The notes below the pieces were generated by a model, which did not search any database, was not told the origin of the DNA, and saw only the letters and a list, made by a program, of their open reading frames with translations. Positions 6,225 to 32,827 of a DNA stretch of 34,367 bases are shown piece by piece. This DNA comes from Macrostomum lignano (Eukaryota). The stretch lies in assembly GCA_002269645.1 (NCBI GenBank), contig NIVC01001564.1, positions 233,517-267,883 of the forward strand. Direction: 5' to 3'. Position 1 is the stretch's first letter; each line of letters starts with the position of its first letter. Position numbers and translations under genes: made by a program.

Positions 6225-6332
<108 letters not shown>

Positions 6333-7036
6333 CTGACACTCTGCATGTAATGTGACGACGCTTGCCCGCCAGAGGAGTGCTTGGGGCATTGTCGCAGGAA
6401 ACACAATAGCGACTGAGACTGTAGCTGTGAAGACAGTAACAGCTGGAGACAATAGCGGTGATGTCAATAGTACTGTATTCTCGACTTTCTACCCCTGGAA
6501 TGTTTTGTTGCTATGCTTCCACGGGTATACTGAAAGAATGGCGCACATTTGTAAGTCCATTTCTCCTGACTAATTTTCGATCCCCTTAAACTGTGCATGC
6601 TGGGACTGGGAGTTGGGCAGAGTTGGTAGTGATAGAAAATTCTCCCACTTATAAGCTCAGTGAGTCTGGTTGGCCTATTTACCAGAAATTCGTGTACGTA
6701 CCGGTAATGCACGGTGAATTTCCTGGAAATGACATCTCGTTAGGAAAGCGACAGTATATAATGATACACACAATGCACTGATATCGTTAACAGCTCGCAA
6801 TCAATTGAGTAGTTACTCGATCGTGAAACTTCTCTAAGAAAAAAATCAATTCCACCTATTGTTTTTCCAAACCTCTTTTGATACAAACGGTAAGAACTTT
6901 TTTATACAGCTCCATTTTTCGTTGCCGAGTTACTGCAAAAAATAATGTCACTAAAATTGTGATTTGAAATTAGGGAACTTTTGGCCATTTCTGCGTGCAT
7001 GTGTACCTGCTTATAGTTACGCTGGTGTCTATGCTG

Positions 7037-7811: not shown

Positions 7812-7814
7812 AAG

Positions 7815-8247
7815 CACAGATACTGTAATAACTGGATGGGCCACTCAGCACATTTGCGCGTAGCTACTTTCAGTGCAGTAGTAAGTAAAGCAGAATTAAT
7901 CATTTAATGAAATATTAAAACCAAGGCTCATTAATTGGCTCTTAGTCCCAGCGTTTCCACACTATTCGCCGCCCCGCCCCAATTTTTATTGTCTTTTTCG
8001 GAATTCCAACCTAAAGCTGCCATGTACATTTCAGTGGACGGGCTAAGGTACATATTGCTGAACCAATTAGCAAGTACATGCACGTCCTCAAGGTTGGGCT
8101 TCAAAACTTAATCAGTCGTTTCAGCTGCCTTTACTTTTCTAAAATAGCTGATATATTCTTCTTTGCTACTGAACTGGAAGTAGAAAGCTGTTTTACTAAG
8201 TAAATCAATATCCCTGAGTGGCCCATCTAGATATTTTAGTATCTGTG
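7815..8247 (-). mobile_element. Inverted, diverged copy of the CACAGATA-TIR MITE
   Basis: TIRs cacagatactgtaataactggatgggccactcag and ctgagtggcccatctagatattttagtatctgtg. Internal sequence is the reverse complement of 276..726 (e.g. cctaaagctgccatgtac, gctgaaccaattagcaag). Confidence 0.8.
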
Positions 8248-10850
8248 GATTTTCTCCTCAGGCGCATATGGTGGAGTAGGAGTACCAAGCTTTTAGTAGT
8301 AATTTGCTGGCCGAACTTGCTGCTTTGCTCTCTTATCTGTTGCGTGTTTTGATTTCGATTTGAGCCGTTTTGATTCGTATGAGTAAATATGCTCGTACTG
8401 CTATTTAGACTGAGAATTGTGTAGATACGTTAAAACCTAACTACCTGAACTACCTGGCTTCAAATTTTATGATTGAGTTCTTGGAAACGCTTATAATTTT
8501 AGCCCCATCGGCCTTTTCCTAAACACTTTAAGAAAAAAAGTTTATCTTGACCAAAGTAGAAACACATTTTAAAAAGTGTCAACGAGCATAGAATTATCAA
8601 ACTCATTTTGTAGTGTATATGAAGTACATCCAGATTCTTGTCATGCAAGTACCACAATGAAACTTCTGTTTGGGTTATTTTCAATTGCATGTAAAATACA
8701 ACTTCGCAGGACGCAATGTATTGTAATTTGCGTCACTGCTAATCAACACCAAAGATCAAACTTTCGGGCCATAGACGATGATGCCAGAGCTGCTCCATGC
8801 CAGAAGATAGCGAAAGCCTCCAGCAGCTTTTCTCAGACAATCTATAGCGGTTCGCTGCATCTCGACTGTCTAATGACCTTGGGCATGATCGAAGGACTTG
8901 CAAATCAAGTCGAATTCGCCGGATGTTACTCCTGAAATCTCCATTCGGCATAGCTCCGTAGTTAAATAGAGGAGGCAGAACTTCTGCCACTGTAGTTGGC
9001 TCTGCGTCCAGCCATTTCGATTTTGTTTGTGTAAATGAAAGATGCAAGCAATCAAATCTGCTGTCTTTCTACTCAGCTCTCTTAAACCTTCTGTCTCCCT
9101 CTTTATGGGATCAAAAAACTACAGTGCATATTAATGTCGATGTGGGCCATAGACTAAAGTTTATTTAAATTTCATTGTAGAAAGTGGGGGCTTCGCCCCC
9201 ACACCCTCATTCTCACTCTCCCCCCTCCTCGACTCCTTCCGGCGCCAAGTAATACCATAGACGAAAGCGCATAGCAATGTTTCTACTGCACTATTTTTTA
9301 GTGTTAATGTCATTACCGGCGCTCGCAAAACAATCGTTGTCACGCACTGGGGCCGCTGTTTATTTACTCATTGTTAGTTGTTTAATTGAGCAGCTTTTTA
9401 TTCAATTCATGAGAAGTTCTATTAAATTCTCAAAAATAGCGTCTATGTCCCTAAGCTACTGAACTCAAATTTATAAGCAACCCATGCCAGCTTTTTCGCA
9501 CAAGTGACCTAAAACAGCGGTCGAACTTTCCGTATTACCGCCATACAAAGTGGCCTATCTAGGGAATATAAGATCTATGATCAACACGACAAAATGAGTC
9601 AATAGAGCGATTAAGCGCAAATCGAATCATCGTAGCATAATTGTCTCTGGCGAATTACACGAAGTTCGGCTAGCCAAGTTGCTGATCGCCAGTTTTGGTT
9701 AGGGCTCTCGTTAGCAGATTTCGGCTAGCTAAATCTTCGCTAACAGATTTCTGCTGGCAAATCTCGGCGAGCAGATAGATTTCTTGCTAGCAAAGGACCC
9801 CGCATATTGTCCCACGGGGTTAAGATGAACAACGAGCATGTCGATGTACACAAGTGAACGCAAGACAGATGAAATTTAGCCTAGGGGTCAGACCCGATCC
9901 AGCTCAGCCAATGAGAGAGCACTAAGGAGAGAGATACAAAGATCCCGCTGAGATCAAAGTCAGAAACAAGCGGGCAAGAAGAAAAGCTTTCGTGCAACCT
10001 CCGACTCCAATATTGAATTTACCCGGTGGGAAAAAAATGGTCGCCGCGACGGCTTCTGTTTGTTGCGTTTACGACGGCGGAAACTCCGTTCGAGTGAACG
10101 CCGAGTTTCCGTCGCCACAACGGTCGCTGCGACGGCGGTCGGAAGACCCATTAGCGACTCTTATATGCGTACGATACTACTTGTATCGTGTAGTAGTGTA
10201 GATGGACCATGATATATCCCACGAATTTTTTATTTTTTCGGAATAAAAAAGAAACGAAATATAGATGCAGTTTTTTTCAACAAATAAACATTATGTTGCT
10301 ATGGGAAATGCTTTTTAGCATTATATTTATAGAATTACCTGATTATTCAGTTCCTGCTAGAGAAGAAAAAATTCACCCATAGACATACTTCAAAAAAGTA
10401 CAATAATATCAAACTGTTGTTTATTAAGCATACACGAAGCGTACAAGAAAGCAATCGTTCACAATATTAAGTACAATAAAGTACAATAAGGTATAAATGG
10501 CCTATAGGGTCCATTGTACCCCACAGACAAATAAGCAGTCATCAATAGAAATATGGCGTGCATTAGCTAACTAATTTTCTGATTATGAACATTGAGCAAC
10601 TACTCCAGATCAGAGCAGTACTCGAGTTCGAGCTCTTGCTCAACTCAGAGTTTGAGGTGAAACTTGCCAGTTATTGCTCACTTTATTCATACGGCCAAAT
10701 GACTAATTCAATGGGCTTTCTATGCACATAAAGTAATAACACTGTTATGTACAGAAGCTGCAATAATAGTCGATTTATGGGGTCAAAAAACTCATTATTT
10801 TTTAAACGTTTGGGGTTTAGAGTAAAAGATCAGCTGTATCATTTAACATA

Positions 10851-11746
10851 TAAGGACACCTAATTTAGCGCCCCAAGGACATCTAGTTTGATCCCCTAAG
10901 GACACCTAATTTATCCCCCAAGTACATCTAGTTTATCGCCCCAAGGACACCTAATTTAGCGCCCCAAGGACATCTAGTTTGATCCCCTAAGGACACCTAA
11001 TTTATCGCCCCAAGTACATCTAGTTTAGCGTCCCAAGGACACCTAATTTATCGCCCCAAGGACACCTAATTTAGTGCCCCAAGGACATCTAGTTTAACGC
11101 CCCAAGGACACCTAATTTAGCGCCTCAAGGACATCTAGTTTAGCGTCCCAAGGACACCTAATTTATCGCCCCAAGGACACCTAATTTAGCGCCCCAAGGA
11201 CATCTAGTTTAGCGTCCCAAGGACACCTAATTTATCGCCCCAAGGACACCTAGTTTAGCGTCCCAAGGACACCTAATTTATCGCCCCAAGGACACCTAGT
11301 TTAGCGTCCCAAGGACACCTAATTTATCGCCCCAAGAACACCTAGTTTAGCGTCCCAAGAACATCTAGTTTGACCCACTAAGGACACCTAATTTATCGCC
11401 CCAAGGACACCTAATTTAGCGCCCCAAGGACATCTAGTTTAGCGTCCCAAGGACACCTAATTTATCACCCCAAGGACACCTAATTTATCGCCCCAAAACA
11501 TCTAGTTTGACCCCCTAAGGACACCTAATTTATCGCCCCAAGGACACCTAATTTAGCGCCTCAAGGACATCTAGTTTAGCGTCCCAAGGACACCTAATTT
11601 ATCGCCCCAAGGACACCTAGTTTAGCGTCCCAAGGACACCTAATTTATCGCCCCAAGGACACCTAGTTTAGCGTCCCAAGGACACCTAATTTATCGCCCC
11701 AAGAACACCTAGTTTAGCGTCCCAAGTACATCTAGTTTGACCCCCA
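10851..11746. repeat. 23-bp minisatellite (CAAGGACACCTAATTTATCGCCC and variants), ~39 units
   Basis: Directly visible tandem units with interspersed variant types (ACACCTAATTT vs ACATCTAGTTT; ATCGCCC, AGCGTCC, GACCCC). Confidence 0.97.
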
Positions 11747-12365
11747 CAGAGAATCGCTCGCTGTGAGAAGCGCCAATTGACAACTGCTTTCAGAAATTTT
11801 TCTTTGAGACTCACTGTATGAGAATCTCTTTCATGCGAGAATTGTCCCTTGCGAAGAACCTTGCAAAAATCGATTCGCAGAGACCCTAACCTGACGTTTT
11901 GATAACTCAAATCTCCAATCCATAGGCGCGTATGGTAATTATAAAGCTTCCTCTCTGGCTCAATGGCCTCCATAAAATTTAGAAAATGCTGTGGAAAAAT
12001 TTCGGCATGCAGTTGGCTTTTGCGAATTTTCTTCTTGATGAATAGCTATTTGCATATGCCATTTTCTAACGCCCTATAAACACATTTTACAATCGGCTTT
12101 CGCGTGGCTATATCTGAGAATAAACATATTTTCAAGACAGCTAATTATGGAGGTGGGAACAGTAAAATGGGGCATCTTTGTGAGAAGGGCAACTGAACCA
12201 CAAAAGGGAAATTCTTAGCTTACTATATGCACCTAAAAATGAGGCATAGAAATGAGATTTTGAGATTGGGGGATTTTTGCGTCACCGATTGTCGGGGGAT
12301 TTTCCGGAGAATTCCCAGGGGGGCTTTGTTTTGACGGGAGGGTGATAGTTGTGCACATATGATGG

Positions 12366-15300
12366 TTAAGGCGATGGAGACTCGTCAGATAAGTCCTGCG
12401 AATCAGGATAGTGCCGCTTTCCGCTGCCCTGCTCGGGTGCACTTGGGCGCTTCTTCGCCTTCTTGCGCAGGTTGTCCCCCGCATGCTTAAGAGCCGAGAT
12501 GACGTGTTTTTCTACATCTCGCTCAGATGGCCTCTCATGAGGCTTGTCGTCTTTGTACATCGTGGAAACGGCTCCTGGAATTGGATTGGTGGTTTTATTC
12601 TGTCAAATTTATTCTACTCTATGCTCCATAGTCCCTACTTTAAGTAGACATTATTCACTTGAATTTGTCTAAATGTTTCATTCTGAACCAGTTTCATTGA
12701 AGAAACTATACTATAAAATTAGGCAAAATGATTCTGATTCTAGATTTACAATTACACACTTTCGGATTTCTGTAAACTTACGCTTCAGAAGAGGAAGCAG
12801 TGTTGTCTGGAAGCCAAGGCTGTCATCTGTTCCCGCGCCGCCGGACCTCTCGGCCAAGCCTCGACCGCAATAGTTTAGCTGGGCCATCATTTCAGGGGTG
12901 ATACACTTTAGCAGCATCCGTCGGATGGTGCTCGCAACACTGTCACCCCGGCAGCGTGCCAGTTGCGTGCGCAGAACTTTCTGTGCCTCCTTATCTGATG
13001 CCAGCTTTAGATAGCCCGCCCACGAAGCAGCTGGTTGCCATTCAGCTTCGGGCAGCTCGATGATAGTGCCGCCAACAGTCGAGTTGCCCTGCCTGTTGAG
13101 GGCCGCCAGAATCTCCCGCTGCTGCTGTTGTATTGTTGCGTCTCGCTGCTCTTGGAGCTGCTGGCCGCGCAACACCAGCAACATCAGCTGCGAGATACCC
13201 TTCAGACTCGCCAAGTCACCGAACTTGGCTGTTAAGTCCATCATCAGCCTGCGAGCGGCTTGGTTCTCCAGTTGTAGGCCCACGCTTTCCCTGTTGCGGC
13301 TCTGGGTGCTTGAGCTAGCAGCTGTGATAGCAGCAGCAGCAGCAGCAGCAGTGAAACTCTGGTCATGTTGAGGCCCTGGTGTCGATGTAGCCGTAGCGGT
13401 ATCTGTTGGCTGAATAGAATAGGGGTGGGGGACAAATCATTACACTCATTACTCCGGATCTGCGAATACATTTATGTCATTTTCTTGTATAAAGCATATA
13501 CACCTTATACTTTCATAGTCTCGAATTCGTACTTAAAATTTAATGCGAACATAGCATAGCATTTATCAATCACAATTACTAATCTTGCACACTCATTTAT
13601 TTATTACTTTGAAGTTGCTGCTGTCGAGACTATAGTGACTAAAATGATGTGCAAAGATGACCAGGGGACCGGATTAACCTTTCCCAAGAATTAAACATGT
13701 CAAGGCGCTCACTATAGTATAAATATACCGTACCCACGGCCAAGCGCCTGAGCGTTATAAATATTTTGTTGTACTTTTTATTTGCGACTCAGTTGTCATG
13801 ATTTACCATAGAAAATTTCCTTTTACAGTTCTTTCTCGCAGTTAAGTTTCTCGCTTCATATCTTCTCATCGTTTAACTCATAATATATATACTTGAATTC
13901 AGCCCAAGTTGACCTATAATTTCACTACAGCGTAAATCTAAAAATTGGTCTGCCATGACATTTTCATCGTCAGGTAGTGAGACACAAGGTGTGCTATGCT
14001 TACCCGCACCGAACGATGCAAATCCGACGGAGAAGCGGCTGCTGCTGAAGGTGAAGCTCGGTTCTGCATGGGTAGTAGTTGAGCCGCCTCCATACTCGGC
14101 TTAGGTACCACAGAAGCTCCATGTGGATGGCTCGCGGATGCTGCTGGCTGCCCGGAACCGACATCAGCCTCTGAATCCTTCGTGCCATGATCCGATTGGA
14201 GTGCCTGCACAGATAGATCGCATAGTATGGGAATGGATTATATAGTTTATCCAGGTGTATGATTATTTCAAAGCCCGAAATTATCTCACGTTATGCTTAG
14301 ACTATAACGACGCAACAGTGAAGGGAAAGGCCCGAATTATACTCATTTTTCTAAGCTAGCAGAATTATATTTTACCTGATGGCTTGTGGATAACTCCGTT
14401 AAAGCAGCCCTTGGCCTTAGCTTAGAGTTTATTCTTAGAAACGTACAAACAAAAATAGGAGTAAAATCATTCTCCTTCCCTGTCCGCAACCGTTGTTTTT
14501 ACCCATAATCCGCTCATTCCTTTCCACTCTGCCCTCCGACCACTCCCACACTTCCATTTGTATTTCTAAGAACGAATTCTTTCTACTGCACTGCAAAAAG
14601 ACAGTCAAAAAGCTTTTTCGACGGCGTGATTTTTGGCTCCTGTTCTGATCGATAGACACCTGGTTTCTTAATAATTTAGTTTGGTAAATTATCTTTTACA
14701 TACCTGCACGGGCTTCAGCAGCAGCCGCTTCTTCACTCCGGGACAAATAACGCGTGGCGAAACCTGAAGGAACATTCGCTTCGGGCGAAAGTCTTTTTCA
14801 AGCCGGCACCTGCGGCAGTACTGTATGACTCTTGTAAGATCATACCCGTCATCAAGCGATACCTGAGAAGTAAGGATTGGGTGTAAATCTAAATTGTATG
14901 GTATAAGTCGTCCCCGACTCCATTTTATTTGTATGCATTATATAGATGAAGGTAGCAGGCTGCAGGTCTTGATAAAGTGCGGACGGTTTTTATATTCTAC
15001 GGAATACCTGCGGAATGGTGTAAAATATTTATGATGCGGACATTGTTTTGGCTCCAATGGCTTCCTCATCAAACGATGCAATATTTCCCCGCATTCAGCT
15101 ACATGCTATACCATCGTGGCCCTTGTTATATGCACTTTTCAATTTCCGAAAAATGTGCACTGCTCTATTTCCAGTAGTGTAGTCGGGCATAGGAATCATA
15201 ACAATCAAAGTGGAAAAACTGGTAGAAATTTCTGCTTCTTGACACGGTACGGTGGACTCAATTTAAACATTGTTATTGCCTAAAGAGTCTGTTGTGGCAG

Positions 15301-15653
15301 TAACAGGCTTTGAAAGCCCAGGAAAAGCAATTATATTAAGGAATTTATTCTATTCCGCATTCCGGTTCCGCAGTTTATAAAGAGCCGCAGGCTGCAGCTG
15401 ACCAAACAATAGAAATAAGATAAAAAAGTCAATATCATTTGCTTACCAATATAACTGTTGCTTCGTAGAAGGCGTCTCCGTAGATGGCGCTGCAACGGAT
15501 CCGCTCCGTCTCATGATCATCACTTTGAGCAAAGCCTATCCAGTCATTGTGACTGTCAAACGTAGCGAATCGCCCTTGAAGCCTTATTTGTTCAAAAGGT
15601 ACTTCAACTACTTCCAGGTCGCAACTAAAAATTACTACGAAGCGCATTGCCAT
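12366..15653 (-). CDS. Five-exon, 467-aa DUF4806-like protein (TE accessory-type). Exons 15653-15447, 14862-14704, 14204-14004, 13409-12782, 12574-12366
   Basis: All four introns are canonical (donors GTAAGC, GTATGT, GTAAGC, GTAAGT; acceptors TTCTCAG, TGTGCAG, TATTCAG, ATTCCAG) and join in frame (phases 0,0,0,1; 1404 nt). The N-terminus MAMRFVVIFSCDLEVVEVPFEQI and the C-terminal GDSVASTIRRMLLKCITPEMMAQLNYCGRG...FQTTLLPLLKRAV...ERDVEKHVISALKHAGD match my recollection of the DUF4806 family pattern (recognised by eye, no HMM run). Confidence 0.75.
14965..15386. mobile_element. MULE/Mutator-like MITE nested in intron 1 of the DUF4806-like gene
   Basis: 10-bp direct repeat GCAGGCTGCA at 14955-14964 and 15387-15396. 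GG-initiated TIRs: GGTCTTGATAAAGTGCGGA vs reverse complement GGCTCTTTATAAACTGCGGA. Confidence 0.75.
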
Positions 15654-15894
15654 ATACGAGCGTACTAGAGCTGAGAGATAACTACAGAAACGATCAGATA
15701 GATATGTCAGATGCTCATAGGAATTGTTCTACGAAGTGAATAGTATCTGACTCAGAAAGTCGTAGTCTGTTCTTAAATGCCACTTAATTCTTTTGTGAAC
15801 CAATGAGAAAGCTACTGCTCTTTTTATCCTCTCTCTCGTTTGCATTCTTTTAGTCCTCATGTTCAGCGACAGCCAATGGGAGATCTTAGTGCAT

Positions 15895-16500
<606 letters not shown>

Positions 16501-17037
16501 TTATCTTGCCTATGAGATACATTGTGATGGTGGGTAGGAGGGTATGCTGTGCTATGTGGCGCCACTCTGTCTGTAACGATGAGACTTTATCGGTACACCC
16601 ACATTCCGGCTGGCCATGAATATGGAACTGAGTGTTCGCAAAAAGGCCCTCAAACCCCCACTACCCCTATCTTTTACATTTCTAAGTTTGAAAATCGGAA
16701 ATGAAGAGCGTGGGAAAATTACTTGAATTGGCTTAGAATGTTAAGATTTAGTATATTTGGATTGCTCTTTGTTTGCCGGGGCTTCAGCACACACCCTCCA
16801 TCTTGCACCCTGCCTCTTCCGGATCCACCAAAATACGCAACAGACTGAGTGTTGTGATCTGTACCCTGGCCCCTCCCCTTCCTTTGATGCAGGCTCCTGC
16901 TTGATTTCCCTGCTTGATTAGTTGCTAAAATGCTATTGCTAAAATTTGTGATTCAAAGGTAACGATAAAAATATATTCTAAAAAAAACATTTGTATTTGT
17001 ATTTACTAATACAGCTTTACAGCTATTTGTATTCATT

Positions 17038-20000
17038 TCTCCGCCTTCGAGTATCTGGAAAGCTGATTAGGCTAGAGATCCGATTCTTTCTGCAAAAGAC
17101 ACCGACTGGGGTGCTCTAATTATCTGTAGAGTCTCATATCTGAATCTACAGATACAGCTTGGCAGTTGCTGATTGATTTTTTTGGCTTTCCCTATTAAAA
17201 TACATTAGAATTTCTAGGAATCTCCGCTTTTGAATATCTGGAAAGCTGATTAGGCTAGAGATCCGATTCTTTCTGCAAAAGACACCGACTGGGGTGCTCT
17301 AATTATCTGTAGAGTCTCATATCTGAATCTACAGATACAGCTTGGCAGTTGCTGATTGATTTTTTTGGCTTTCCCTATTAAAATACATTAGAATTTCTAG
17401 GAATCTCCGCTTTTGAATATCTGGAAAGCTGATTAGGCTAGAGATCCGATTCTTTCTGCAAAAGACACCGACTGGGGTGCTCTAATTATCTGTAGAGTCT
17501 CATATCTGAATCTACAGATACAGCTTGGCAGTTGCTGATTGATTTTTTTGGCTTTCCCTATTAAAATACATTAGAATTTCTAGGAATCTCCGCTTTTGAA
17601 TATCTGGAAAGCTGATTAGGCTAGAGATCCGATTCTTTCTGCAAAAGACACCGACTGGGGTGCTCTAATTATCTGTAGAGTCTCATATCTGAATCTACAG
17701 ATACAGCTTGGCAGTTGCTGATTGATTTTTTTGGCTTTCCCTATTAAAATACATTAGAATTTCTAGGAATCTCCGCTTTTGAATATCTGGAAAGCTGATT
17801 AGGCTAGAGATCCGATTCTTTCTGCAAAAGACACCGACTGGGGTGCTCTAATTATCTGTAGAGTCTCATATCTGAATCTACAGATACAGCTTGGCAGTTG
17901 CTGATTGATTTTTTTGGCTTTCCCTATTAAAATACATTAGAATTTCTAGGAATCTCCGCTTTTGAATATCTGGAAAGCTGATTAGGCTAGAGATCCGATT
18001 CTTTCTGCAAAAGACACCGACTGGGGTGCTCTAATTATCTGTAGAGTCTCATATCTGAATCTACAGATACAGCTTGGCAGTTGCTGATTGATTTTTTTGG
18101 CTTTCCCTATTAAAATACATTAGAATTTCTAGGAATCTCCGCTTTTGAATATCTGGAAAGCTGATTAGGCTAGAGATCCGATTCTTTCTGCAAAAGACAC
18201 CGACTGGGGTGCTCTAATTATCTGTAGAGTCTCATATCTGAATCTACAGATACAGCTTGGCAGTTGCTGATTGATTTTTTTGGCTTTCCCTATTAAAATA
18301 CATTAGAATTTCTAGGAATCTCCGCTTTTGAATATCTGGAAAGCTGATTAGGCTAGAGATCCGATTCTTTCTGCAAAAGACACCGACTGGGGTGCTCTAA
18401 TTATCTGTAGAGTCTCATATCTGAATCTACAGATACAGCTTGGCAGTTGCTGATTGATTTTTTTGGCTTTCCCTATTAAAATACATTAGAATTTCTAGGA
18501 ATCTCCGCTTTTGAATATCTGGAAAGCTGATTAGGCTAGAGATCCGATTCTTTCTGCAAAAGACACCGACTGGGGTGCTCTAATTATCTGTAGAGTCTCA
18601 TATCTGAATCTACAGATACAGCTTGGCAGTTGCTGATTGATTTTTTTGGCTTTCCCTATTAAAATACATTAGAATTTCTAGGAATCTCCGCTTTTGAATA
18701 TCTGGAAAGCTGATTAGGCTAGAGATCCGATTCTTTCTGCAAAAGACACCGACTGGGGTGCTCTAATTATCTGTAGAGTCTCATATCTGAATCTACAGAT
18801 ACAGCTTGGCAGTTGCTGATTGATTTTTTTGGCTTTCCCTATTAAAATACATTAGAATTTCTAGGAATCTCCGCTTTTGAATATCTGGAAAGCTGATTAG
18901 GCTAGAGATCCGATTCTTTCTGCAAAAGACACCGACTGGGGTGCTCTAATTATCTGTAGAGTCTCATATCTGAATCTACAGATACAGCTTGGCAGTTGCT
19001 GATTGATTTTTTTGGCTTTCCCTATTAAAATACATTAGAATTTCTAGGAATCTCCGCTTTTGAATATCTGGAAAGCTGATTAGGCTAGAGATCCGATTCT
19101 TTCTGCAAAAGACACCGACTGGGGTGCTCTAATTATCTGTAGAGTCTCATATCTGAATCTACAGATACAGCTTGGCAGTTGCTGATTGATTTTTTTGGCT
19201 TTCCCTATTAAAATACATTAGAATTTCTAGGAATCTCCGCTTTTGAATATCTGGAAAGCTGATTAGGCTAGAGATCCGATTCTTTCTGCAAAAGACACCG
19301 ACTGGGGTGCTCTAATTATCTGTAGAGTCTCATATCTGAATCTACAGATACAGCTTGGCAGTTGCTGATTGATTTTTTTGGCTTTCCCTATTAAAATACA
19401 TTAGAATTTCTAGGAATCTCCGCTTTTGAATATCTGGAAAGCTGATTAGGCTAGAGATCCGATTCTTTCTGCAAAAGACACCGACTGGGGTGCTCTAATT
19501 ATCTGTAGAGTCTCATATCTGAATCTACAGATACAGCTTGGCAGTTGCTGATTGATTTTTTTGGCTTTCCCTATTAAAATACATTAGAATTTCTAGGAAT
19601 CTCCGCTTTTGAATATCTGGAAAGCTGATTAGGCTAGAGATCCGATTCTTTCTGCAAAAGACACCGACTGGGGTGCTCTAATTATCTGTAGAGTCTCATA
19701 TCTGAATCTACAGATACAGCTTGGCAGTTGCTGATTGATTTTTTTGGCTTTCCCTATTAAAATACATTAGAATTTCTAGGAATCTCCGCTTTTGAATATC
19801 TGGAAAGCTGATTAGGCTAGAGATCCGATTCTTTCTGCAAAAGACACCGACTGGGGTGCTCTAATTATCTGTAGAGTCTCATATCTGAATCTACAGATAC
19901 AGCTTGGCAGTTGCTGATTGATTTTTTTGGCTTTCCCTATTAAAATACATTAGAATTTCTAGGAATCTCCGCTTTTGAATATCTGGAAAGCTGATTAGGC

Positions 20001-21806
20001 TAGAGATCCGATTCTTTCTGCAAAAGACACCGACTGGGGTGCTCTAATTATCTGTAGAGTCTCATATCTGAATCTACAGATACAGCTTGGCAGTTGCTGA
20101 TTGATTTTTTTGGCTTTCCCTATTAAAATACATTAGAATTTCTAGGAATCTCCGCTTTTGAATATCTGGAAAGCTGATTAGGCTAGAGATCCGATTCTTT
20201 CTGCAAAAGACACCGACTGGGGTGCTCTAATTATCTGTAGAGTCTCATATCTGAATCTACAGATACAGCTTGGCAGTTGCTGATTGATTTTTTTGGCTTT
20301 CCCTATTAAAATACATTAGAATTTCTAGGAATCTCCGCTTTTGAATATCTGGAAAGCTGATTAGGCTAGAGATCCGATTCTTTCTGCAAAAGACACCGAC
20401 TGGGGTGCTCTAATTATCTGTAGAGTCTCATATCTGAATCTACAGATACAGCTTGGCAGTTGCTGATTGATTTTTTTGGCTTTCCCTATTAAAATACATT
20501 AGAATTTCTAGGAATCTCCGCTTTTGAATATCTGGAAAGCTGATTAGGCTAGAGATCCGATTCTTTCTGCAAAAGACACCGACTGGGGTGCTCTAATTAT
20601 CTGTAGAGTCTCATATCTGAATCTACAGATACAGCTTGGCAGTTGCTGATTGATTTTTTTGGCTTTCCCTATTAAAATACATTAGAATTTCTAGGAATCT
20701 CCGCTTTTGAATATCTGGAAAGCTGATTAGGCTAGAGATCCGATTCTTTCTGCAAAAGACACCGACTGGGGTGCTCTAATTATCTGTAGAGTCTCATATC
20801 TGATCTACAGATACAGCTTGGCAGTTGCTGATTGATTTTTTTGGCTTTCCCTATTAAAATACATTAGAATTTCTAGGAATCTCCGCTTTTGAATATCTGG
20901 AAAGCTGATTAGGCTAGAGATCCGATTCTTTCTGCAAAAGACACCGACTGGGGTGCTCTAATTATCTGTAGAGTCTCATATCTGAATCTACAGATACAGC
21001 TTGGCAGTTGCTGATTGATTTTTTTGGCTTTCCCTATTAAAATACATTAGAATTTCTAGGAATCTCCGCTTTTGAATATCTGGAAAGCTGATTAGGCTAG
21101 AGATCCGATTCTTTCTGCAAAAGACACCGACTGGGGTGCTCTAATTATCTGTAGAGTCTCATATCTGAATCTACAGATACAGCTTGGCAGTTGCTGATTG
21201 ATTTTTTTGGCTTTCCCTATTAAAATACATTAGAATTTCTAGGAATCTCCGCTTTTGAATATCTGGAAAGCTGATTAGGCTAGAGATCCGATTCTTTCTG
21301 CAAAAGACACCGACTGGGGTGCTCTAATTATCTGTAGAGTCTCATATCTGAATCTACAGATACAGCTTGGCAGTTGCTGATTGATTTTTTTGGCTTTCCC
21401 TATTAAAATACATTAGAATTTCTAGGAATCTCCGCTTTTGAATATCTGGAAAGCTGATTAGGCTAGAGATCCGATTCTTTCTGCAAAAGACACCGACTGG
21501 GGTGCTCTAATTATCTGTAGAGTCTCATATCTGAATCTACAGATACAGCTTGGCAGTTGCTGATTGATTTTTTTGGCTTTCCCTATTGAAATACATTAGA
21601 ATTTCTAGGAATCTCCGCTTTTGAATATCTGGAAAGCTGATTAGGCTAGAGATCCGATTCTTTCTGCAAAAGACACCGACTGGGATGCTCTAATTATCTG
21701 TAGAGTCTCATATCTGAATCTACAGATACAGCTTGGCAGTTGCTGATTGATTTTTTTGGCTTTCCCTATTAAAATACATTAGAATTTCTAGGAATCTCCG
21801 CTTTTG
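17038..21806. repeat. 183-bp tandem satellite, 26 nearly identical copies
   Basis: Period 183 measured from successive GGAATCTCC anchors (17218, 17401, 17584 ... 21792). Each unit contains a 10-bp stem TATCTGTAGA-N14-TCTACAGATA and the palindrome TAGAATTTCTA. Confidence 0.99.
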
Positions 21807-22342
21807 ATCTATGACATCGACAATTAGAGCGCGCCATTGAATTTCTCGTAAAATTGTGATTGAATGCTAATGCAAATAAAGTAATTTTAATTCAGCTCAT
21901 ATTTAATTTAAATAACTTAATTTCAAAGCAAACGTTCTTCCTATTTGTCGTGTAATTTGCGGCCGCTTTGAGGCTTTGTCATTGGAGGATTCATCATGCG
22001 GCGGGGATGAGGTGGGGAACAGTTAAGGGGTGTGGGGAACGAATAAAATTAATGAGCTATGTTAGACTGTGTTAGATTTCCCGCGGGGGATCTAATCAGA
22101 CCAATAAGTCGACATCACAGACCAATGAGTGTTCTGTAAATCTAAAAGATTGCTTGCTTCTTCCCGTGGCCCCAAGTGTTACTTGCATACATTCGTATTG
22201 GTGCAGTGAAGTAAAGGTCTTACAAAGCTGTTTGCTCATAGAGTAGTGTCCTATGCCCTACTTATAGTAGGCACAAGACAACACGTTTAAACTTCGGAAG
22301 ACTAATAATGCATTATAATGTACAACAAAATTCCAAGTCTGA

Positions 22343-22612
22343 TTTTTACACGATGAAGAAGTCGATATTTCAACACCCTTGATTAAACCAGGACTCAAAT
22401 TTCCCTATTTGCATCCCAGCTGCATAGCAACATATTTTCCCTTGGATACCATTGTTTCTATCACCTCAGCTGTTCCCATTAAGGATTATGATGTCCCAGA
22501 TTGCACATTAAAGCGAACTGACTACATTTTAAGCAAAGAAACGTATTCGTTATGCCATAATCGGCAAAATGCAATCAATAGATTTATCCATGACAAAGAT
22601 CAATATCCTTAG
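22343..22612 (+). pseudogene. Possible remnant of a TE-derived coding exon near the right end of the TIR element
   Basis: Open frame FLHDEEVDISTPLIKPGLKFPYLHPSCIATYFPLDT...RTDYILSKETY... loosely resembles the (F/Y)LHP...P..D...R.Y.L tail of invertebrate transposon proteins. Stop codons lie upstream. Recognition is weak. Confidence 0.25.
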
Positions 22613-23878
22613 TCAAGCATTTGATTAACGAGTTCAAAATTTTAACAGCAGACAAGACGTTAAATTTCTATGCAACACTTTAAAATTTGCACTTTAAACA
22701 GCCAGTGCAGAAATAGTCGTATACAAGAAAAAATAATTTGTTACTATGCGGTTGGACTGCTAGGGTAACAAATTCACAAGGATTCTGTTCGCCTGCAAGC
22801 CAAAATTAAATAAGGTTGGGGACTTTAGAGGTTTAATTTGGCCTAGACCGTTGTATTAAGAAGATACCTATTAGTAGGTAAAACATCATGAAATGAAATG
22901 ACATAAAATGACCATTTATCTAAAAAGTACCGATTCCAAAGCTCTATAAGTCTTTGAAGGCGACTCAAGTTACGCTTTTATAAGCCATATAAAATTTATT
23001 TGCCTGAGAAAGGCTAATGCGCAGTTCATACTACTGAGTAGTATTCTGCATACACGTGGGTCGCCAATTAGGCTAACAGTCGAGTGCTTGGCGACCCGGA
23101 GGTTAGCCGACCCATTTTAGTACGCGGGCGCGACCAGGCGCATAACCTCTGATCAAGCGACCCTTTGGCGACCATGTCAAATTATTGATATTTCACTTCC
23201 TTAACCCCGAACTAACCTCAAACAGCCTGTTTTGAGTCATTTGGAGTACATTAGTAGCAGAAAAAAAATTCGACCCGAAATACGACGGACAGCCGTCGCA
23301 ACTCCGTCGCCGCGACCATTTTTTTCCCATCGGGTATTTCAATTTTAAATTATTTCAAGTCTGATGTGAGTCGAATGCGAAGTTAGTTGCACGACAACTA
23401 AGAAAAGAGAAGATTGGGTTTCTGTCAGATTTATCTAAAATTGACAATATTCGTATCATTTCCTATTCACTCTACGATGTACGAGTGTATATTGCGTTTG
23501 TTGGCCCCAAATCGGGCCGTTTTTATTTTTCCTGCTTCGTGCTTACTTAAGGCGTTTCGTATAATAATTTTACGATCGATATTTTAGACCTCTCCGTGCG
23601 CATGGCGCACGAAGAAGTCCAGTTTTATTACCTTTAAATATAGCCTGGTCTCTCTCTTCCTACCTTTTACGACTTTTTACCGTTAAAACTTTCACTGCCC
23701 GCCTCTTGCTAAATATAGCCTTCCTAAGTGTTAGTCATTCTGTCTTCGTTATTTGTCTCACTAGCAATTGGACAGTTTACAACACAATGGCCAATCACGC
23801 AAACCCGTGCATCAAGTCATGCACTCTCATGTACTTCAATCAAAGTTAAAATCACTCAAAAACCCTACGCACTCCAGA

Positions 23879-26800
23879 ATGGCCCAGACCTCCGACGGCC
23901 TGCGTCTGCGTGGACAGTCCGAGCCGCTCACCCGACGACTCAAGCGACTGCTCGACGAGTACTCTGACGGTCTGGCGGTGCCCAAGGAGCTGCTGCAGAA
24001 CGCTGACGACGCGGGCGCCACCGAGCTCACCATGCTCTACGACTGTCGCAAGAACTCAAACTGGCGCGGCTCCGAGTCGCTGCTCGATCCGGCGATGGCC
24101 GACTGTCAGGGACGGGCGCTGTGGGCCTTCAACAACGCCACCTTCAGCGACGAGGACTTCGACAACATCCTGCAGCTGAGCGGAGCCACCAAGCTGGAGA
24201 AGACGGCCAAGGTCGGTCGCTTCGGTCTGGGCTTCAACTCGGTGTACAACCTGACTGACGTGCCGCAGATCCTCAGTCGACACCGCATGCTGATCCTCGA
24301 CCCGCATGGTGAGCGCAGAGGCGAGGGCTACTTGGAGACGGTGTACGCGAGTCACGGGGACAGGGACACTGGAGTTGAGCTCGACTTTCAAGCACAGCGG
24401 AGTCTGCTGGATCAGTACGCCAACCAGTTTGCACCGTTCGCTGGAGTCTCAGGCTGCAATCTGCAAGCGGATGAAGGAAACTTCGCCGGCACGCTGCTGC
24501 GTCTTCCGCTGCGCACTGAGGCTCAGGCAGCGAAGTCGAAGATCTGCGATCGCGTGTACTCTGACTCGGAGATTCGTGGCTTGTTGAGACTGGCTGCAGA
24601 GCAAGCTGACACTATGCTTCTGTTCACCCAGACAGTGCGAACATTCCGGTGTCTGTTCCTGCCGTCCAATGCGACCGATCCTTCAAATCAAACTCAACTC
24701 GTGTTCTGCGTTCACAAGAGCCCTCTCAAATATTTCCAGCGACATGCCATTGCACTGCCACCGCTACCAATAGCAGGAATGTCACAAGCGGATCAAGAGT
24801 TCGCTGCTCAGAGCTCTATTCTCAAGGTAGCCGAAGCTCTGATCGAATCTGCTACTCAAGGAGGGTCTGGACGAAATCAAGCACATCGCTGTCAAGCGAC
24901 TGTCGAGGTAGAGGTTCAGCTTGGAGACTCAGCTCATGACCAGTTCCAGATCAGCACAGTCGCCTCCACCAGAGTGTGGCTCGTGTGCGCTGCTGTCGCC
25001 ACTGGGCAGTCGCTCGCTGTCGCGTTGGAGCAGCGTCGTCTCGGACTGGCGCCTGTGGGAGCCGTGGCTCTGCCCATCGAGCAGTCTAACAGGATTGTGC
25101 CGCTATCACGTGACACACAGCCGGCCTCGCTGCTGTTCTGTTTCCTACCGCTGCCTGTAGAAAATCCATTTCCAGTGATGCTGAACGCGAGCTTCTCCGT
25201 CACCTCGAGCCGACGCCACCTCAACGAGGTCACGGTCGACGAGAAGCAGGGCGTGTGGAGTCTCGGCGAGTGGAACCGAGTGCTGCTCACAGACGTCATT
25301 TGTCCTGCCTACATCGACGCTCTGAAGATTCTAAGTGGAATGTCTTTGGTAAATGCAGAGATTTCGCAAGAGCTGTGGCCTCGATTCGACAGAGCTACTC
25401 AGTCTGTGTGGAGGCCGCTTATTGAGAAGTTCTACGCTTCCCTGCTTGACGGTCAGGCGTCAATCTTTCACACATCAGCCGGCTGGAAAAGTTTGGGACA
25501 TACAGTGTTTCTGGATCCCAGCATCCTGTCACTGGGTGGGATTTCAGATTGTTTGAGTCGACTCGCCACGAGACTCGTGGGTCAGCACGAAGGTGTAGCA
25601 TCGTTGACCGATGGAGTTCGACGAACTGTGGAGCAGCTGGGACTGACGAACAAGATTTTGCAGCGTCAATGGTCGGGCGAGACACTGCTGCTTAATTTGG
25701 TGCCGAACATGCCTCGCTTGTGGCAGTCGGGCTACTCTGAGGACTGCTTTAAAGCGCTGAAATTCATACTGAATGTTATCAGTGGAGGCGGCAATGCAGA
25801 CTGGAGCTCCGCTTCTAGAATTGTTACTCAAAAGGTTTTGAATTCGTTGAAGCAGTCCTATTGCATTCCTAACGTTGGAAACGCCTTTTGTCAGCCTCTG
25901 CAGCTTCTGGACACCAGCTGTCAGGCTGCAAAGCTGTTTGAAATGAACGCAAGCGTTTTTCCTCACAGCGACCTGCAAACACCGGATCAGCTAAAAGCGC
26001 TCCGCACAGTCGGGCTCCGTGCGGATCTCAATTGGGCCGAGTTGCTGAGTCGCGCTCAGTCAGTTGCTGCGCTCTCCGAGCCTCAGAGAACTGAGCGCAC
26101 GGTTGCGCTGCTTTCGTACTTGGATTCGTTCCTCTCTAAGTTTGTAAACCAGCCGATCGGTCAGCTGAGAAACGTAGCATTTCTACCTGCCTTGAAGAAA
26201 GCTAACGACAGTTGCCTTGTCTGGCTTTCAGATCGGCATCCAAAAACGCAACTTTTCCAGCCTTGTCAGCTGTTTGATGCCAGCTGCAAAGATCTCGTTT
26301 CGGCTTCATACCTTATTTTGGACGAGACAGTGCTGCGTGATGTTACCTCATCAAGCAGACAAGATCTATTGGCTCAAATCGGAGTTTTGAACGTGAGTTA
26401 CGTCGCCAATGAGGTGGCTTGGAAGCAGCTGGTAGCTCTGGCCGGCACCCAAGCTGGCAATGAAGAAACTCTGCGAGTGAGCCGGTGCGTTTATCGACAC
26501 CTCAGTGCCCAAATCTCCAACCGACGGCTCAATAGCCAAATGGTTCTTGGCATAGTGACTCAGACTCCGAACATTATTTGGTCCCCATCAGGTTTCATTA
26601 CGCCTGCTCAAGTAAGTCTGTCGAGATCTGATGCGGGATTCGAGCCATTTCTTCATGTTTTGCCTTCCGAACTAAGCGGCATTCAGTGCGAAAGCTTCTT
26701 CAGGGCAGCTGGAGTCAATGAAAATTTCGCGGCATCGCACTATGCAGGTGTGCTTAAACTTCTTTCTCAGCGTTACTCCTCGGCACCACTAATACCTGGC

Positions 26801-31789: not shown

Positions 31790-32145
31790 AGCAACTGCCA
31801 GATAGACCAAGGGACATTGTGAACCAAATTGTGGCTTACAGAAATGACGATGGAAGACTTGTTTACGCTCGGGTAGTGGAAAGACACCCTGGTGGCAGCG
31901 ATAACCCGTGGACTAGCGAGTTTACTATTAAAATCGGTGAAGGTTCGAAACTACGAGTTTCAATGTCTGCGCTGTTCTCCTTTGAAGAGCGGTCTTTCGC
32001 CCAAGCTAACCAAAATAATGGTGAGGACATTGCAACAACGGTGGATCATCTGCTGAGCAGCGCAGCTTCTCTGCCGACCGAGCAGCAGCGCCAGATTTTT
32101 CAGCGCATACTGGCTCACTACTCGAACTCGGATGAGTCATTAAAC
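31744..32145 (+). CDS. SACS: Sacsin-like gene continuation (frame 1): pre-J region and degenerate J-like segment
   Basis: After a -1 switch near 31741-31750 the frame reads AREPVPEFEQCLLKQLP...NQIVAY...LVYARVV...EFTIKIG...SALFSF...VDHLLSSAASLPTEQQRQIFQRIL. This is colinear with the sacsin P.P...GE.VGY...YA.IV...Y.IDIG...LDLYKF and AWKLP...RKKII.RL region. Confidence 0.85.
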
Positions 32146-32827
32146 CAGGTGCGAACGCGCGCTGCAACATGGATGGACCCGACAGTTCGATCAGTGCATT
32201 GGTGGATGGCGCGAGCAGACAACTCGGGTTACCAGGTACCGACAGATTCTCATCGCAGAGGAAGTTGTCGTCACCATGCGATCAAGAAGCTACGGAGGAG
32301 GAGGCTGGAGCGGTGGCGGCGGCGGCGGTGGCTGCGCTTTCCGCTACCCTGGCCGGTCTGGCAGTTCGAGAGGCGGCGGTTCTGCCAGCTTTTTCTGCAG
32401 TTCAGGTGGCGCAAACTTTGCCAAACCGTCGCCTGACGATGCGGCGAGGTACCTGAAGACGGCGCGGCACGACCTGCGCTCGGCTGCGCGATTGGCTGAG
32501 GCCGGAGAGTACAACTGGGCCTGCTACATCAGCTGGCAGGCTACTGAGAAGGCGCTGAAGGCATTGCTGCTGAGACAGGGTCAGCCCATCGAGCGCAGCC
32601 ACCAGCTGAGCCAGCATCTGAGCTGCGTCTCGAGCAGCGACCTGCAGAGCAGCCTGGCCGGTCACGTTGCCGACCTGGCGGGCGCCATGGTGGACGACTG
32701 TCGCTACCCGAGCGACCGCAGCCGACCGCGGGTTCCGTCGGAGGTCTTCGGAGCGGAGCAGGCAGCGCGGGCTCTGCAGGGAGCGGAGGGCGTCGAACGG
32801 TGCGTCTCGTCCGAGTTTGCCGAATGA
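32146..32827 (+). CDS. SACS: Sacsin-like gene C-terminus (frame 2): Gly-rich linker and HEPN domain
   Basis: PSPDDAARYLKTARHDL...YNWACYISWQATEKALKALL...SHQL...RYP...FAE* is a clear HEPN signature, as at the end of sacsins. This frame is open from 32144. Confidence 0.9.

What the first reader, a model, noticed from the sequence alone, without database searches (positions are those of the whole stretch)
10022..23334. 13.3-kb TIR-bounded element with an intact accessory gene but no transposase, next to the sacsin promoter
Seen: 31-bp TIRs with TA on both sides, subterminal GCGACC/CGACGG repeats, a spliced gene, two tandem arrays and a nested MITE. The right end is ~545 bp from the sacsin ATG. 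From memory, animal EnSpm/CMC elements often have CCC...GGG ends with 2-bp TSDs, and DUF4806 genes often sit beside such transposases. Inference: a large non-autonomous element that kept its accessory gene. In a tandem array each sacsin gene lies between the right end of one element and the left end of the next, a composite-transposon-like layout that could drive or accompany amplification.
Basis: partly seen in the sequence, partly recalled or inferred. Interest (0 to 1): 0.7.

Follow-up and report, generated by a model that had tools for sequence, protein, structure and literature searches.

The report
Young transposase-less CACTA-type flatworm transposon
The 13.3-kb stretch is a real, very recently inserted DNA transposon of the flatworm Macrostomum lignano that has lost its transposase but kept a DNA-binding-type helper gene; it landed next to a sacsin gene by chance and did not drive that gene's duplication.

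Summary
Window 10022-23334 is bounded by 31-bp inverted ends (29/31) and a TA duplication. The same M. lignano assembly holds eight insertion loci of this element. All six with both ends readable have a perfect 2-bp duplication of varying sequence. A paralogous sacsin unit (L012) shows the exact empty site with a single TA.

Copies are over 99% identical and differ mainly in the number of 183-bp repeats (1 to 26). None encodes a transposase. All nine sequences keep an intact 5-exon, 467-aa gene. Its model shows a Tudor-like N-terminus, a coiled coil and a BEN-like (DUF4806) C-terminus.

In two sister families, homologues of this gene sit beside a Transposase_21/DUF4218-type transposase. Those elements also start CCCAGTGG and have 2-bp duplications. 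I therefore assign the element to the CMC (CACTA-like) superfamily as a non-autonomous member mobilised in trans. No autonomous copy with identical ends was found.

The proposed composite-transposon role in sacsin amplification is not supported. Sacsin units are 3-6% diverged, whereas element copies differ by 0.3% or less. Three sacsin paralogue loci lack the element, and the other copies lie near unrelated genes. The nested MITE was not found. This is a new member of a known kind.

The parts
10020..10021 (.). Left copy of the 2-bp target-site duplication (TA)
   Evidence: The empty site in L012 has a single TA between the two flanks (118 of 121 identical across the junction).
10022..10052 (+). 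Left terminal inverted repeat, CCCGGTGGGAAAAAAATGGTCGCCGCGACGG. This is the 3' end relative to the accessory gene.
   Evidence: The same 31-mer ends the similarity in copies L001-L008 and L016 (L015 differs by a 1-bp deletion in the A run).
10022..10160 (.). Left subterminal region with GGTCGC and CGACGG repeats
   Evidence: Motif positions.
10852..11738 (.). 23-bp tandem array (about 38.7 units, 82% matches), present with 31-36 units in every copy
12366..15653 (-). Accessory gene, 5 exons (15653-15447, 14862-14704, 14204-14004, 13409-12782, 12574-12366), 467 aa. The protein has a Tudor-like N-terminal domain, a disordered linker, a coiled coil and a BEN-like (DUF4806) C-terminal domain.
   Evidence: GT-AG splice sites. 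465 of 467 residues identical to PAA69771.1. AlphaFold model and Foldseek hits to BEN domains on DNA and to an RBBP1 Tudor domain.
16104..16499 (.). (TC)n microsatellite, with a short second tract at 15902-15935
17038..21807 (.). 183-bp tandem array, 26 units, 99% identical. It lies where sister family L013 carries its transposase gene. Unit number varies from 1 to 26 between copies.
   Evidence: L013 layout.
23050..23334 (.). Right subterminal region with GGTCGC/GCGACC and CGACGG repeats
23304..23334 (-). Right terminal inverted repeat (reverse complement CCCGATGGGAAAAAAATGGTCGCGGCGACGG). The same two differences from the left TIR are present in every copy whose right end is readable.
23335..23336 (.). 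Right copy of the target-site duplication (TA)
23879..32827 (+). Context, not part of the element: the sacsin-like gene. The ATG is at 23879, the open frame runs to 31789, and the C-terminal HEPN-like part lies in other frames up to 32827.
   Evidence: PF25794 SACS in the paralogues.

Best explanation
Window 10022-23334 is one copy of a young, multicopy, non-autonomous cut-and-paste DNA transposon of Macrostomum lignano. It belongs to the CMC (CACTA/Mirage/Chapaev) superfamily, in the animal 'CCC-ended, 2-bp TSD' group first described as TRC elements. It inserted at a TA 545 bp upstream of one sacsin paralogue after the sacsin units had already diverged. It has no transposase gene. The position that one sister element (L013) uses for the transposase ORF holds a hypervariable 183-bp satellite. 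It keeps the clade's second gene, a Tudor-like/coiled-coil/BEN-like (DUF4806) protein. Inferred mechanism: a CMC transposase from another element cuts at the shared CCCRGTGG termini. The element's own BEN-like protein is a sequence-specific DNA binder for its family-specific subterminal GGTCGC/CGACGG repeats, playing a TnpA-like role. That would explain why this gene is retained intact. Shown here: mobility, boundaries, TSD, absence of a transposase, homology of the accessory gene to genes lying beside CMC transposases, and the BEN-like fold. Inferred: trans-mobilisation, which transposase does it, and the binding of the accessory protein to the subterminal repeats.
For: Organism and copies: the accessory protein matches M. 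lignano proteins. Its 90% cluster has members on at least 10 contigs. Eight distinct loci carry the element: the window, L008, L001, L002, L003, L004 (= L015), L005 and L006 (= L007). TSDs: six of six loci with both ends readable have matching 2-bp flanks of different sequence: TA, GT, AA, TG, TT, TG. Empty site: L012 9273-9458 matches window 9836-10021, and L012 9457-15290 matches window 23335-29168, with one TA at the junction. Youth: copies are collinear and 99.0-99.6% identical overall. The gene region is 99.7-99.97% identical, and all nine ORFs are intact with 0-2 amino-acid differences. Superfamily: sister element L013 6585-12587 has TIR CCCAGTGGAAAAGACAACGTTGAT (21 of 24), TSD CT, a 638-aa ORF and a 31%-identical accessory homologue immediately downstream. 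Homologues of that ORF carry PF13960 (DUF4218) and PF02992 (Transposase_21). In L017 a transposase homologue lies divergently next to another accessory homologue; the candidate ends are CCCAGTGGGAC with TSD AT. L014 is a third transposase-bearing element with CCCAGTGTT ends and TSD TA. Literature: animal CACTA-related elements, including one from the flatworm Schistosoma, start with CCC, have 2-bp TSDs and carry internal tandem repeats (PMC1636069). Accessory protein: the top Foldseek hits are BEN domains bound to DNA (4x0g, 4ix7, 8yzs, 7yun, 7yuk; probability 0.72-0.99) and a Tudor domain (2mam). DUF4806 has been reported as structurally equivalent to the Insv BEN domain (PMC10789644). Each family has its own subterminal motif: GGTCGC/CGACGG here, CAACGG in L013, CCGCCC in L017.
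Against: No autonomous copy with the same TIRs and subterminal motifs was found. All nine copies I could fetch lack a transposase, so trans-mobilisation and the identity of the helper are inferred. I could not scan the whole M. lignano genome. The Foldseek E-values for the BEN domains are weak (0.2-1). This was a whole-protein query, and the model has mean pLDDT 66.8, with the folded domains at about 75-93. A profile search against PDB sequences found nothing. Binding of the accessory protein to the subterminal repeats is untested. With so few substitutions between copies, selection on the ORF cannot be measured. The ends of L013, L014 and L017 each rest on a single copy, and those of L017 are only 11 nt long.
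Confidence: 0.8

Rival explanations
1. One reading: element copies flank each sacsin gene in a tandem array in a composite-transposon-like layout that drives or accompanies sacsin amplification.
For: The window starts with the 3' end of a previous sacsin copy; head 1-1686 and tail 32689-34367 are 96.9% identical. On the same contig a second element copy (L008, left end at record position 217980) lies in the same orientation before a 3,071-N scaffold gap that ends at window position 1. So the order element - gap - sacsin 3' end - spacer - element - sacsin does exist on this scaffold.
Against: The left flank of the upstream copy is unrelated to the window's spacer, so it is an independent insertion and not the same unit duplicated. 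L012 is a collinear sacsin unit with the exact empty site. The L009 sacsin tandem pair has a 7-kb spacer with no TIR, and L011 has none either. Sacsin units are 3-6% diverged whereas element copies differ by 0.03-1%. The duplication therefore predates the insertions. Six other copies sit at loci with no sacsin similarity; the annotated neighbours there include acyl-CoA dehydrogenase, glycosyltransferase, Tctex-1 and actin genes.
Confidence: 0.04
2. The accessory gene is a passenger: a captured or host-derived gene, or a regulator, that plays no part in transposition. The element is an ordinary deletion derivative that happens to retain it.
For: No biochemical evidence links the protein to the ends. 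BEN-domain proteins are often transcriptional repressors (established knowledge). Too few substitutions exist between copies to show purifying selection. L014 carries a CMC transposase with no detectable homologue of this gene by tblastn.
Against: All 15 HMMER relatives among 1.84 billion representatives that could be traced are M. lignano multicopy genes. In the two families examined, the homologue lies directly beside the transposase between CCC...GGG ends. A firefly homologue of the transposase is itself named as DUF4806-containing (P0230). Subterminal motifs differ between families in step with the diverged accessory proteins.
Confidence: 0.12
3. The element is autonomous after all: either the 467-aa protein or an unrecognised spliced gene in 15654-23334 supplies the catalytic activity.
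For: Copies are extremely young, and every one examined has the same structure with no transposase-bearing master copy.
Against: The protein model shows only a small beta-rich domain, a coiled coil and a helical BEN-like domain, with no RNase-H-like fold. Much of 15654-23334 is a (TC)n tract plus a 183-bp satellite that shrinks to a single unit in L002 without loss of mobility signatures. No match to 120 CMC transposases or their HMM was found. The GenBank annotation places no other gene inside the element.
Confidence: 0.03
4. The copies arose by segmental duplication or polyploidy rather than by transposition.
For: M. lignano has a highly duplicated genome (established knowledge). Two pairs of loci (L006/L007 and L004/L015) are the same insertion on two contigs.
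Against: Similarity between loci stops exactly at the TIR termini. Flanks are unrelated. There are six different perfect 2-bp duplications and a precise empty site.
Confidence: 0.01

Closest known systems
Animal CACTA-related 'TRC' elements (SmTRC1 of Schistosoma mansoni and relatives in Tribolium and Aedes; DeMarco et al. 2006, PMC1636069), i.e. animal members of the CMC superfamily
   Same: TIRs begin with CCC. The target-site duplication is 2 bp. There is an internal tandem-repeat region. The host is a flatworm. Sister families in the same genome encode Transposase_21/DUF4218-type transposases.
   Different: This family encodes no transposase. Its TIRs are 31 bp, against 54 bp in SmTRC1. 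It carries a separate Tudor-like/BEN-like gene, which the passages of that paper I read do not describe.
Maize En/Spm (CACTA), with TnpD transposase plus TnpA, which binds subterminal repeats, and its defective dSpm/I derivatives (established knowledge)
   Same: A two-component logic is plausible: a catalytic protein acting at the termini and a second, sequence-specific protein acting on subterminal repeat clusters. Internally deleted derivatives are mobilised in trans.
   Different: The termini are CCC rather than CACTA. The TSD is 2 bp rather than 3 bp. The accessory protein is unrelated to TnpA (BEN-like fold). Here the derivative lost the transposase but kept the accessory gene. Binding to the repeats is untested.
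BEN-domain DNA-binding proteins (Insv, Bsg25A/Elba, BEND6, BANP, NACC1) and Pfam DUF4806
   Same: The C-terminal domain of the accessory protein has these as its best structural matches. UniProt labels the family DUF4806, and one paralogue 'BEN domain-containing'. DUF4806 has been reported as structurally equivalent to the Insv BEN domain (PMC10789644).
   Different: No sequence-level match to any solved BEN domain was found. This protein is transposon-encoded and multicopy, and it has a Tudor-like N-terminal domain.
Sister CMC families in M. lignano: L013 6585-12587, L017 about 3936-13324, L014 6637-14857
   Same: All have CCCRGTG termini, 2-bp TSDs and clustered subterminal motifs. L013 and L017 also carry a homologous accessory gene (27-31% identical).
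   Different: They carry a 600-660-aa transposase ORF. Their subterminal motifs differ (CAACGG, CCGCCC, CCGGAATAATTCCGG). There is no nucleotide similarity to the window element (for L013, for L014; L017 was not compared at DNA level).

Membership tests
CMC (CACTA/Mirage/Chapaev) superfamily of DNA transposons | The element encodes a DDE transposase of the Transposase_21 (PF02992) / DUF4218 (PF13960) type | tested here: not met
   tblastn with 120 homologues and an HMM built from them gave no credible match in 10022-23334. This is expected for a non-autonomous member, so membership must rest on the other rows.
CMC (CACTA/Mirage/Chapaev) superfamily of DNA transposons | Target-site duplication of 2-3 bp with no fixed sequence (2 bp in animal members) | tested here: met
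   Six of six copies have perfect 2-bp TSDs: TA, GT, AA, TG, TT, TG. The empty site has a single TA. The literature value comes from PMC1636069.
CMC (CACTA/Mirage/Chapaev) superfamily of DNA transposons | Terminal motif: CACTA in plants, CCC in the described animal elements | tested here: met
   The ends read CCCGGTGGG... and CCCGATGGG.... They resemble the CCCAGTGG/CCCAGTGT ends of three transposase-bearing M. lignano elements.
CMC (CACTA/Mirage/Chapaev) superfamily of DNA transposons | Clusters of short subterminal repeats inside both ends | tested here: met
   8 of 9 GGTCGC sites and 7 of 10 CGACGG sites lie within 300 bp of an end.
CMC (CACTA/Mirage/Chapaev) superfamily of DNA transposons | Shared ancestry with elements that do encode the superfamily's transposase | tested here: met
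   The accessory protein is homologous (E = 1.6e-29 and 1.9e-12, 27-31% identity) to genes lying next to CMC transposase ORFs within CCC...GGG ends in L013 and L017.
Non-autonomous derivative of a specific autonomous element | An autonomous element with the same TIRs and subterminal sequences exists in the genome | tested here: inconclusive
   All nine fetched copies lack a transposase. Related elements share only the first 10-12 terminal bases and have other subterminal motifs. A whole-genome search was not possible with these tools.
Tc1/mariner | Obligatory TA target duplication | tested here: not met
   Only the window copy has TA; the others have GT, AA, TG, TT, TG.
piggyBac | TTAA target duplication flanking CCC...GGG ends | tested here: not met
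   The flanks here are ...TTTA|CCC and GGG|TATT, and the duplication is 2 bp.
Composite transposon or element-mediated amplification of sacsin | Sacsin units are regularly bounded by element copies at homologous positions and are no older than the elements | tested here: not met
   L012 has the empty site. L009 and L011 lack the element. The upstream copy (L008) has an unrelated flank. Units are 3-6% diverged against 1% or less for the elements.
BEN / DUF4806 domain proteins (the accessory gene product) | BEN-type all-helical DNA-binding fold | tested here: met
   The top five credible Foldseek PDB hits are BEN domains in complex with DNA (probability 0.89-0.99, target TM-score 0.42-0.65, E = 0.2-0.4), for a domain modelled at pLDDT 83-93. 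UniProt gives DUF4806/BEN labels. Significance is modest, and a sequence profile against the PDB found nothing.
BEN / DUF4806 domain proteins (the accessory gene product) | Sequence-specific DNA binding | not testable with these tools
   This needs EMSA, DAP-seq or a similar assay with the subterminal repeats.

The most novel reading that the evidence does not exclude
The family is 'half-autonomous'. It has discarded the catalytic transposase, which it borrows from diverged CMC relatives that recognise the shared CCCRGTGG tip. It must keep its own BEN-like protein because recognition of its private subterminal repeats (GGTCGC/CGACGG) cannot be borrowed. That would divide transposon functions into a sharable catalytic module and a non-sharable specificity module. 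It would also assign a transposition role to the DUF4806/BEN-like domain, a link I found in none of the papers retrieved by two text searches.
Probability: 0.3. Interest if true: 0.6.

Novelty: new member of a known kind. Interest (0 to 1): 0.35.

Why it matters
The finding gives a cleanly delimited, very recently active DNA transposon family in a regeneration and transgenesis model flatworm. It comes with exact ends, the TSD rule, an empty site and candidate helper transposases in the same genome. It also suggests a testable role for the poorly characterised DUF4806/BEN-like domain as the end-binding accessory factor of animal CACTA-type elements. For the sacsin locus the result is negative and useful. 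The element is a late, incidental insertion 545 bp upstream of one paralogue, not the cause of the array. It could still alter that copy's promoter and be polymorphic between lines.

Tried and rejected
- **Transposase remnants in the element.** I ran tblastn with the L013 transposase, then with 120 homologues, then an HMM of them against the six-frame translation. Only noise came back.
- **Nested MITE.** Short-range inverted-repeat scans of the unique parts of the element gave only weak pairs: 11774-11802/11994-12022 (79%) and 21870-21887/22397-22414 (83%). Neither has supporting copies. BLAST of the element against all fetched DNA outside element copies found nothing.
- **Sequence-profile search of the accessory family against the PDB.** The only hit was a chance match at E = 1.7.
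- **Word-indexed protein search with the accessory protein.** It returned 3 hits, all M. lignano. The exhaustive HMMER search found only 15, and every one that could be traced is from M. lignano. The family therefore looks lineage-restricted at sequence level.
- **Is the upstream copy (L008) the same tandem unit as the window copy?** I compared its left flank with the window and with all other loci. It is unrelated to both.
- **Does L014 carry an accessory homologue?** None was found by tblastn with P0001. A profile search was not run.
- **Prokaryotic, viral and metagenome collections.** I did not scan them for the TIR because the host is an animal genome and those collections would not hold it.
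- **Considered and rejected.** Tc1/mariner was rejected because the TSD is not TA-specific. piggyBac was rejected because there is no TTAA. Segmental duplication was rejected because of the TSDs and the empty site.

Full report
**1. What is in the window**

The two ends of the claimed element are real. Positions 10022-10052 read CCCGGTGGGAAAAAAATGGTCGCCGCGACGG. The reverse complement of 23304-23334 reads CCCGATGGGAAAAAAATGGTCGCGGCGACGG, a 29 of 31 match. The repeat finder reports the pair as 33 nt at 94% once the flanking TA is included. A search for the TIR with up to three mismatches finds only these two sites; none is expected in shuffled sequence.

The interior contains the following features.
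- A 23-bp array lies at 10852-11738.
- A (TC)n tract lies at 16104-16499.
- A 183-bp array of 26 nearly identical units lies at 17038-21807.
- The short motifs GGTCGC and CGACGG cluster at the ends. Eight of nine and seven of ten sites respectively lie within 300 bp of a terminus.
- The only gene is on the minus strand, with five GT-AG exons: 15653-15447, 14862-14704, 14204-14004, 13409-12782 and 12574-12366. It encodes 467 aa.

The sacsin ATG at 23879 is 545 bp from the right end.

**2. Origin of the window**

The accessory protein matches Macrostomum lignano proteins: PAA69771.1 differs at 2 of 467 residues. Locus L016 is 100% identical to window 2366-24093. This places the window at NIVC01001564.1:233517-267883 of assembly GCA_002269645.1, the last 34,367 bases of that contig. 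Window position 1 immediately follows a 3,071-N scaffold gap.

**3. It is a mobile element**

I fetched the contigs that carry members of the accessory protein's 90% cluster. They hold the same element at eight distinct loci: the window, L008, L001 (truncated), L002, L003, L004 (= L015), L005 and L006 (= L007).
- In every case the similarity to the window stops exactly at the TIR terminus, and the flanks are unrelated.
- Six loci have both ends readable. All six show a perfect 2-bp duplication, each different in sequence: TA, GT, AA, TG, TT, TG. Six chance matches at about 1 in 16 each is below 1e-6.
- A collinear sacsin unit gives the empty site. L012 9273-9458 matches window 9836-10021, and L012 9457-15290 matches window 23335-29168. 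The window's two flanks joined around one TA match L012 at 118 of 121 positions.

The boundaries 10022 and 23334, the 2-bp TSD and the insertion event are therefore demonstrated. The target is not TA-specific.

**4. Age and variation**

The copies are collinear and 99.0-99.6% identical to the window copy. Lengths run from 8,749 to 13,313 bp. Nearly all of the difference comes from the 183-bp array, which has 26, 1, 7, 4, 11, 10 and at least 24 units in different copies. One copy (L004/L015) also carries a nested 1,965-bp element. In the 3.4-kb gene region the copies are 99.7-99.97% identical. All nine sequences keep the full 467-aa reading frame, with 0-2 amino-acid differences. This indicates a very recent burst. 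There are too few substitutions to measure selection.

**5. No transposase here, but one in the sister families**

No copy has a transposase, and no remnant was detectable.

An exhaustive HMMER search of 1.84 billion representatives with the accessory protein found only 15 relatives. All that could be traced are M. lignano multicopy genes, 27-32% identical over their full length.

| Locus | Element ends | TIR | TSD | Transposase | Accessory homologue |
|---|---|---|---|---|---|
| L013 | 6585-12587 | CCCAGTGGAAAAGACAACGTTGAT, 21 of 24 | CT | 638-aa single ORF at 7772-9688 | directly downstream |
| L017 | candidate 3936/13324 | CCCAGTGGGAC (11 nt) | AT | homologue, 39% identical to L013's | divergently adjacent |
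| L014 | 6637-14857 | CCCAGTGTTCCC..., 22 of 24 | TA | homologue, 40% identical to L013's | none by tblastn |

Homologues of the L013 ORF carry Pfam PF13960 (DUF4218) and PF02992 (Transposase_21). Sources name them 'Transposase domain-containing', and one firefly homologue is named 'DUF4806 domain-containing'.

DeMarco et al. 2006 described exactly this pattern for animal CACTA-related elements: CCC termini, 2-bp TSDs and internal tandem repeats. Their examples include one from the flatworm Schistosoma mansoni (PMC1636069).

On these grounds I assign the window element to the CMC superfamily as a non-autonomous member. The defining transposase is absent from the element itself. The assignment therefore rests on the termini, the TSD, the subterminal repeats and the homology of its gene to the second gene of transposase-bearing relatives.

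**6. The accessory protein**

An AlphaFold model built on nine family members has mean pLDDT 66.8. The low-confidence stretch is the disordered linker at 118-236. The folded parts score about 75-93.
- Residues 1-110 form a beta-rich N-terminal domain.
- Residues 236-297 form a long coiled coil.
- Residues 315-440 form a helical C-terminal domain.

Foldseek against the PDB puts BEN domains bound to DNA at the top: Bsg25A 4x0g, Insv 4ix7, NACC1 8yzs, BEND6 7yun and BANP 7yuk. Probabilities are 0.72-0.99 and target TM-scores 0.42-0.65, but E-values are only 0.2-1. The RBBP1 Tudor domain (2mam) also appears. A published protocol reports DUF4806 as structurally equivalent to the Insv BEN domain (PMC10789644). 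A sequence profile against the PDB found nothing.

The protein is therefore most likely a sequence-specific DNA binder. Each family has its own subterminal motif: GGTCGC/CGACGG here, CAACGG in L013, CCGCCC in L017 and CCGGAATAATTCCGG in L014. The extreme termini, by contrast, are similar across families.

From this I infer, without proof, a division of labour. A transposase from a relative acts on the shared tip. The element's own BEN-like protein recognises its private subterminal repeats, as TnpA does in maize En/Spm (established knowledge). This would explain why the gene is kept intact in an element that lost its transposase.

**7. Relation to sacsin**

The window does show a tandem arrangement. 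Its first 1,686 bases, which hold the 3' end of a previous sacsin and the sequence downstream of it, are 96.9% identical to 32689-34367. The evidence nevertheless goes against any causal role for the element.
- L012 is a collinear unit with the empty site.
- L009 is a sacsin tandem pair with a 7-kb spacer and no TIR. L011 likewise has none.
- Sacsin units are 3-6% diverged, whereas element copies differ by 1% or less.
- Six other copies sit at loci with no sacsin similarity; the annotated neighbours there include acyl-CoA dehydrogenase, glycosyltransferase, Tctex-1 and actin genes.

A second element copy does lie on the same scaffold, before the gap that precedes the window. Its left flank is unrelated to the window's spacer, so it is an independent insertion. 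The join is across Ns.

**8. Verdict**

- The interpretation as a transposase-less CMC-type element with an intact DUF4806 gene is supported and is now backed by copies, TSDs, an empty site and autonomous relatives.
- The composite-transposon and amplification idea is not supported.
- No autonomous copy with identical ends was found, so trans-mobilisation and the role of the accessory protein remain inferences.
- This is a new member of a known kind. Its moderate interest lies mainly in the possible role of a BEN-like protein in animal CACTA-type transposition.

Noticed in passing
window 1 (NIVC01001564.1:233517); L008 (record 210457-233743): The window starts immediately after a 3,071-N scaffold gap. 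On the other side of the gap lies a second copy of the same element in the same orientation. Its left end is at record position 217980, and at least 24 units of its 183-bp array run into the gap. The true content between that copy and the sacsin 3' end at window 1-135 is unknown.
   Followed up: partly
L004 and L015, at the position equivalent to window 16781-16788: One copy of the element carries a nested 1,965-bp insertion. It has roughly 27-bp TIRs (CATAGAATTCTAGATAACTAACTGGAAG), an 8-bp TSD (GCTTCAGC) and no long ORF of obvious function. This looks like a non-autonomous hAT-type element.
   Followed up: partly
window 7037-7811, 7815-8250, 294-726 and 32957-33415: A GC-rich 24-bp tandem array (33 units) abuts an inverted, 72-89% identical copy of a roughly 430-bp module. 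That module also lies just downstream of each sacsin gene. Related 24-bp arrays lie upstream of the L011 sacsin. It may be another repeat family or a MITE-like module.
   Followed up: no
window 31789-32827: The 2,673-codon sacsin open frame stops at 31789. The remaining C-terminal parts, including the HEPN-like end, continue in other frames (31819-32436 and 32276-32827). This implies short introns or frameshifts. GenBank models of the paralogues are only 1,215-1,762 aa and so look truncated.
   Followed up: no
L013 14503-19094: About 2 kb beyond the 6-kb CMC element lies a non-LTR retrotransposon, with a 447-aa ORF1 and a 1,083-aa ORF whose translation looks (by eye, not searched) like endonuclease, reverse transcriptase and RNase H.
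   Followed up: no
L001 8646-15541: This is a truncated copy of the element: the left end plus the accessory gene, broken 66 bp into the first 183-bp unit. It lies inside the span of an ACAD9/ACADVL-like gene model on the opposite strand.
   Followed up: partly
proteins P0002, P0003 and P0110 (UniProt/MetaClust models of M. lignano): Several database gene models fuse the first exons of this transposon gene, or of its paralogue, to unrelated downstream sequence such as an AAA_16/myosin-like part. These are probably annotation chimeras caused by insertions.
   Followed up: no
window 6228-6329: A perfect (CT)51 microsatellite lies in the sacsin spacer.
   Followed up: no
L013 6585-6835 and 12338-12587; L014 and L017 element ends: Each M. 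lignano CMC family has its own dense subterminal motif: CAACGG in L013, the CCGGAATAATTCCGG palindrome in L014 and CCGCCC in L017. All share the CCCAGTG tip. The L013 motif (CAACGG) differs by one base from the window's CGACGG.
   Followed up: partly
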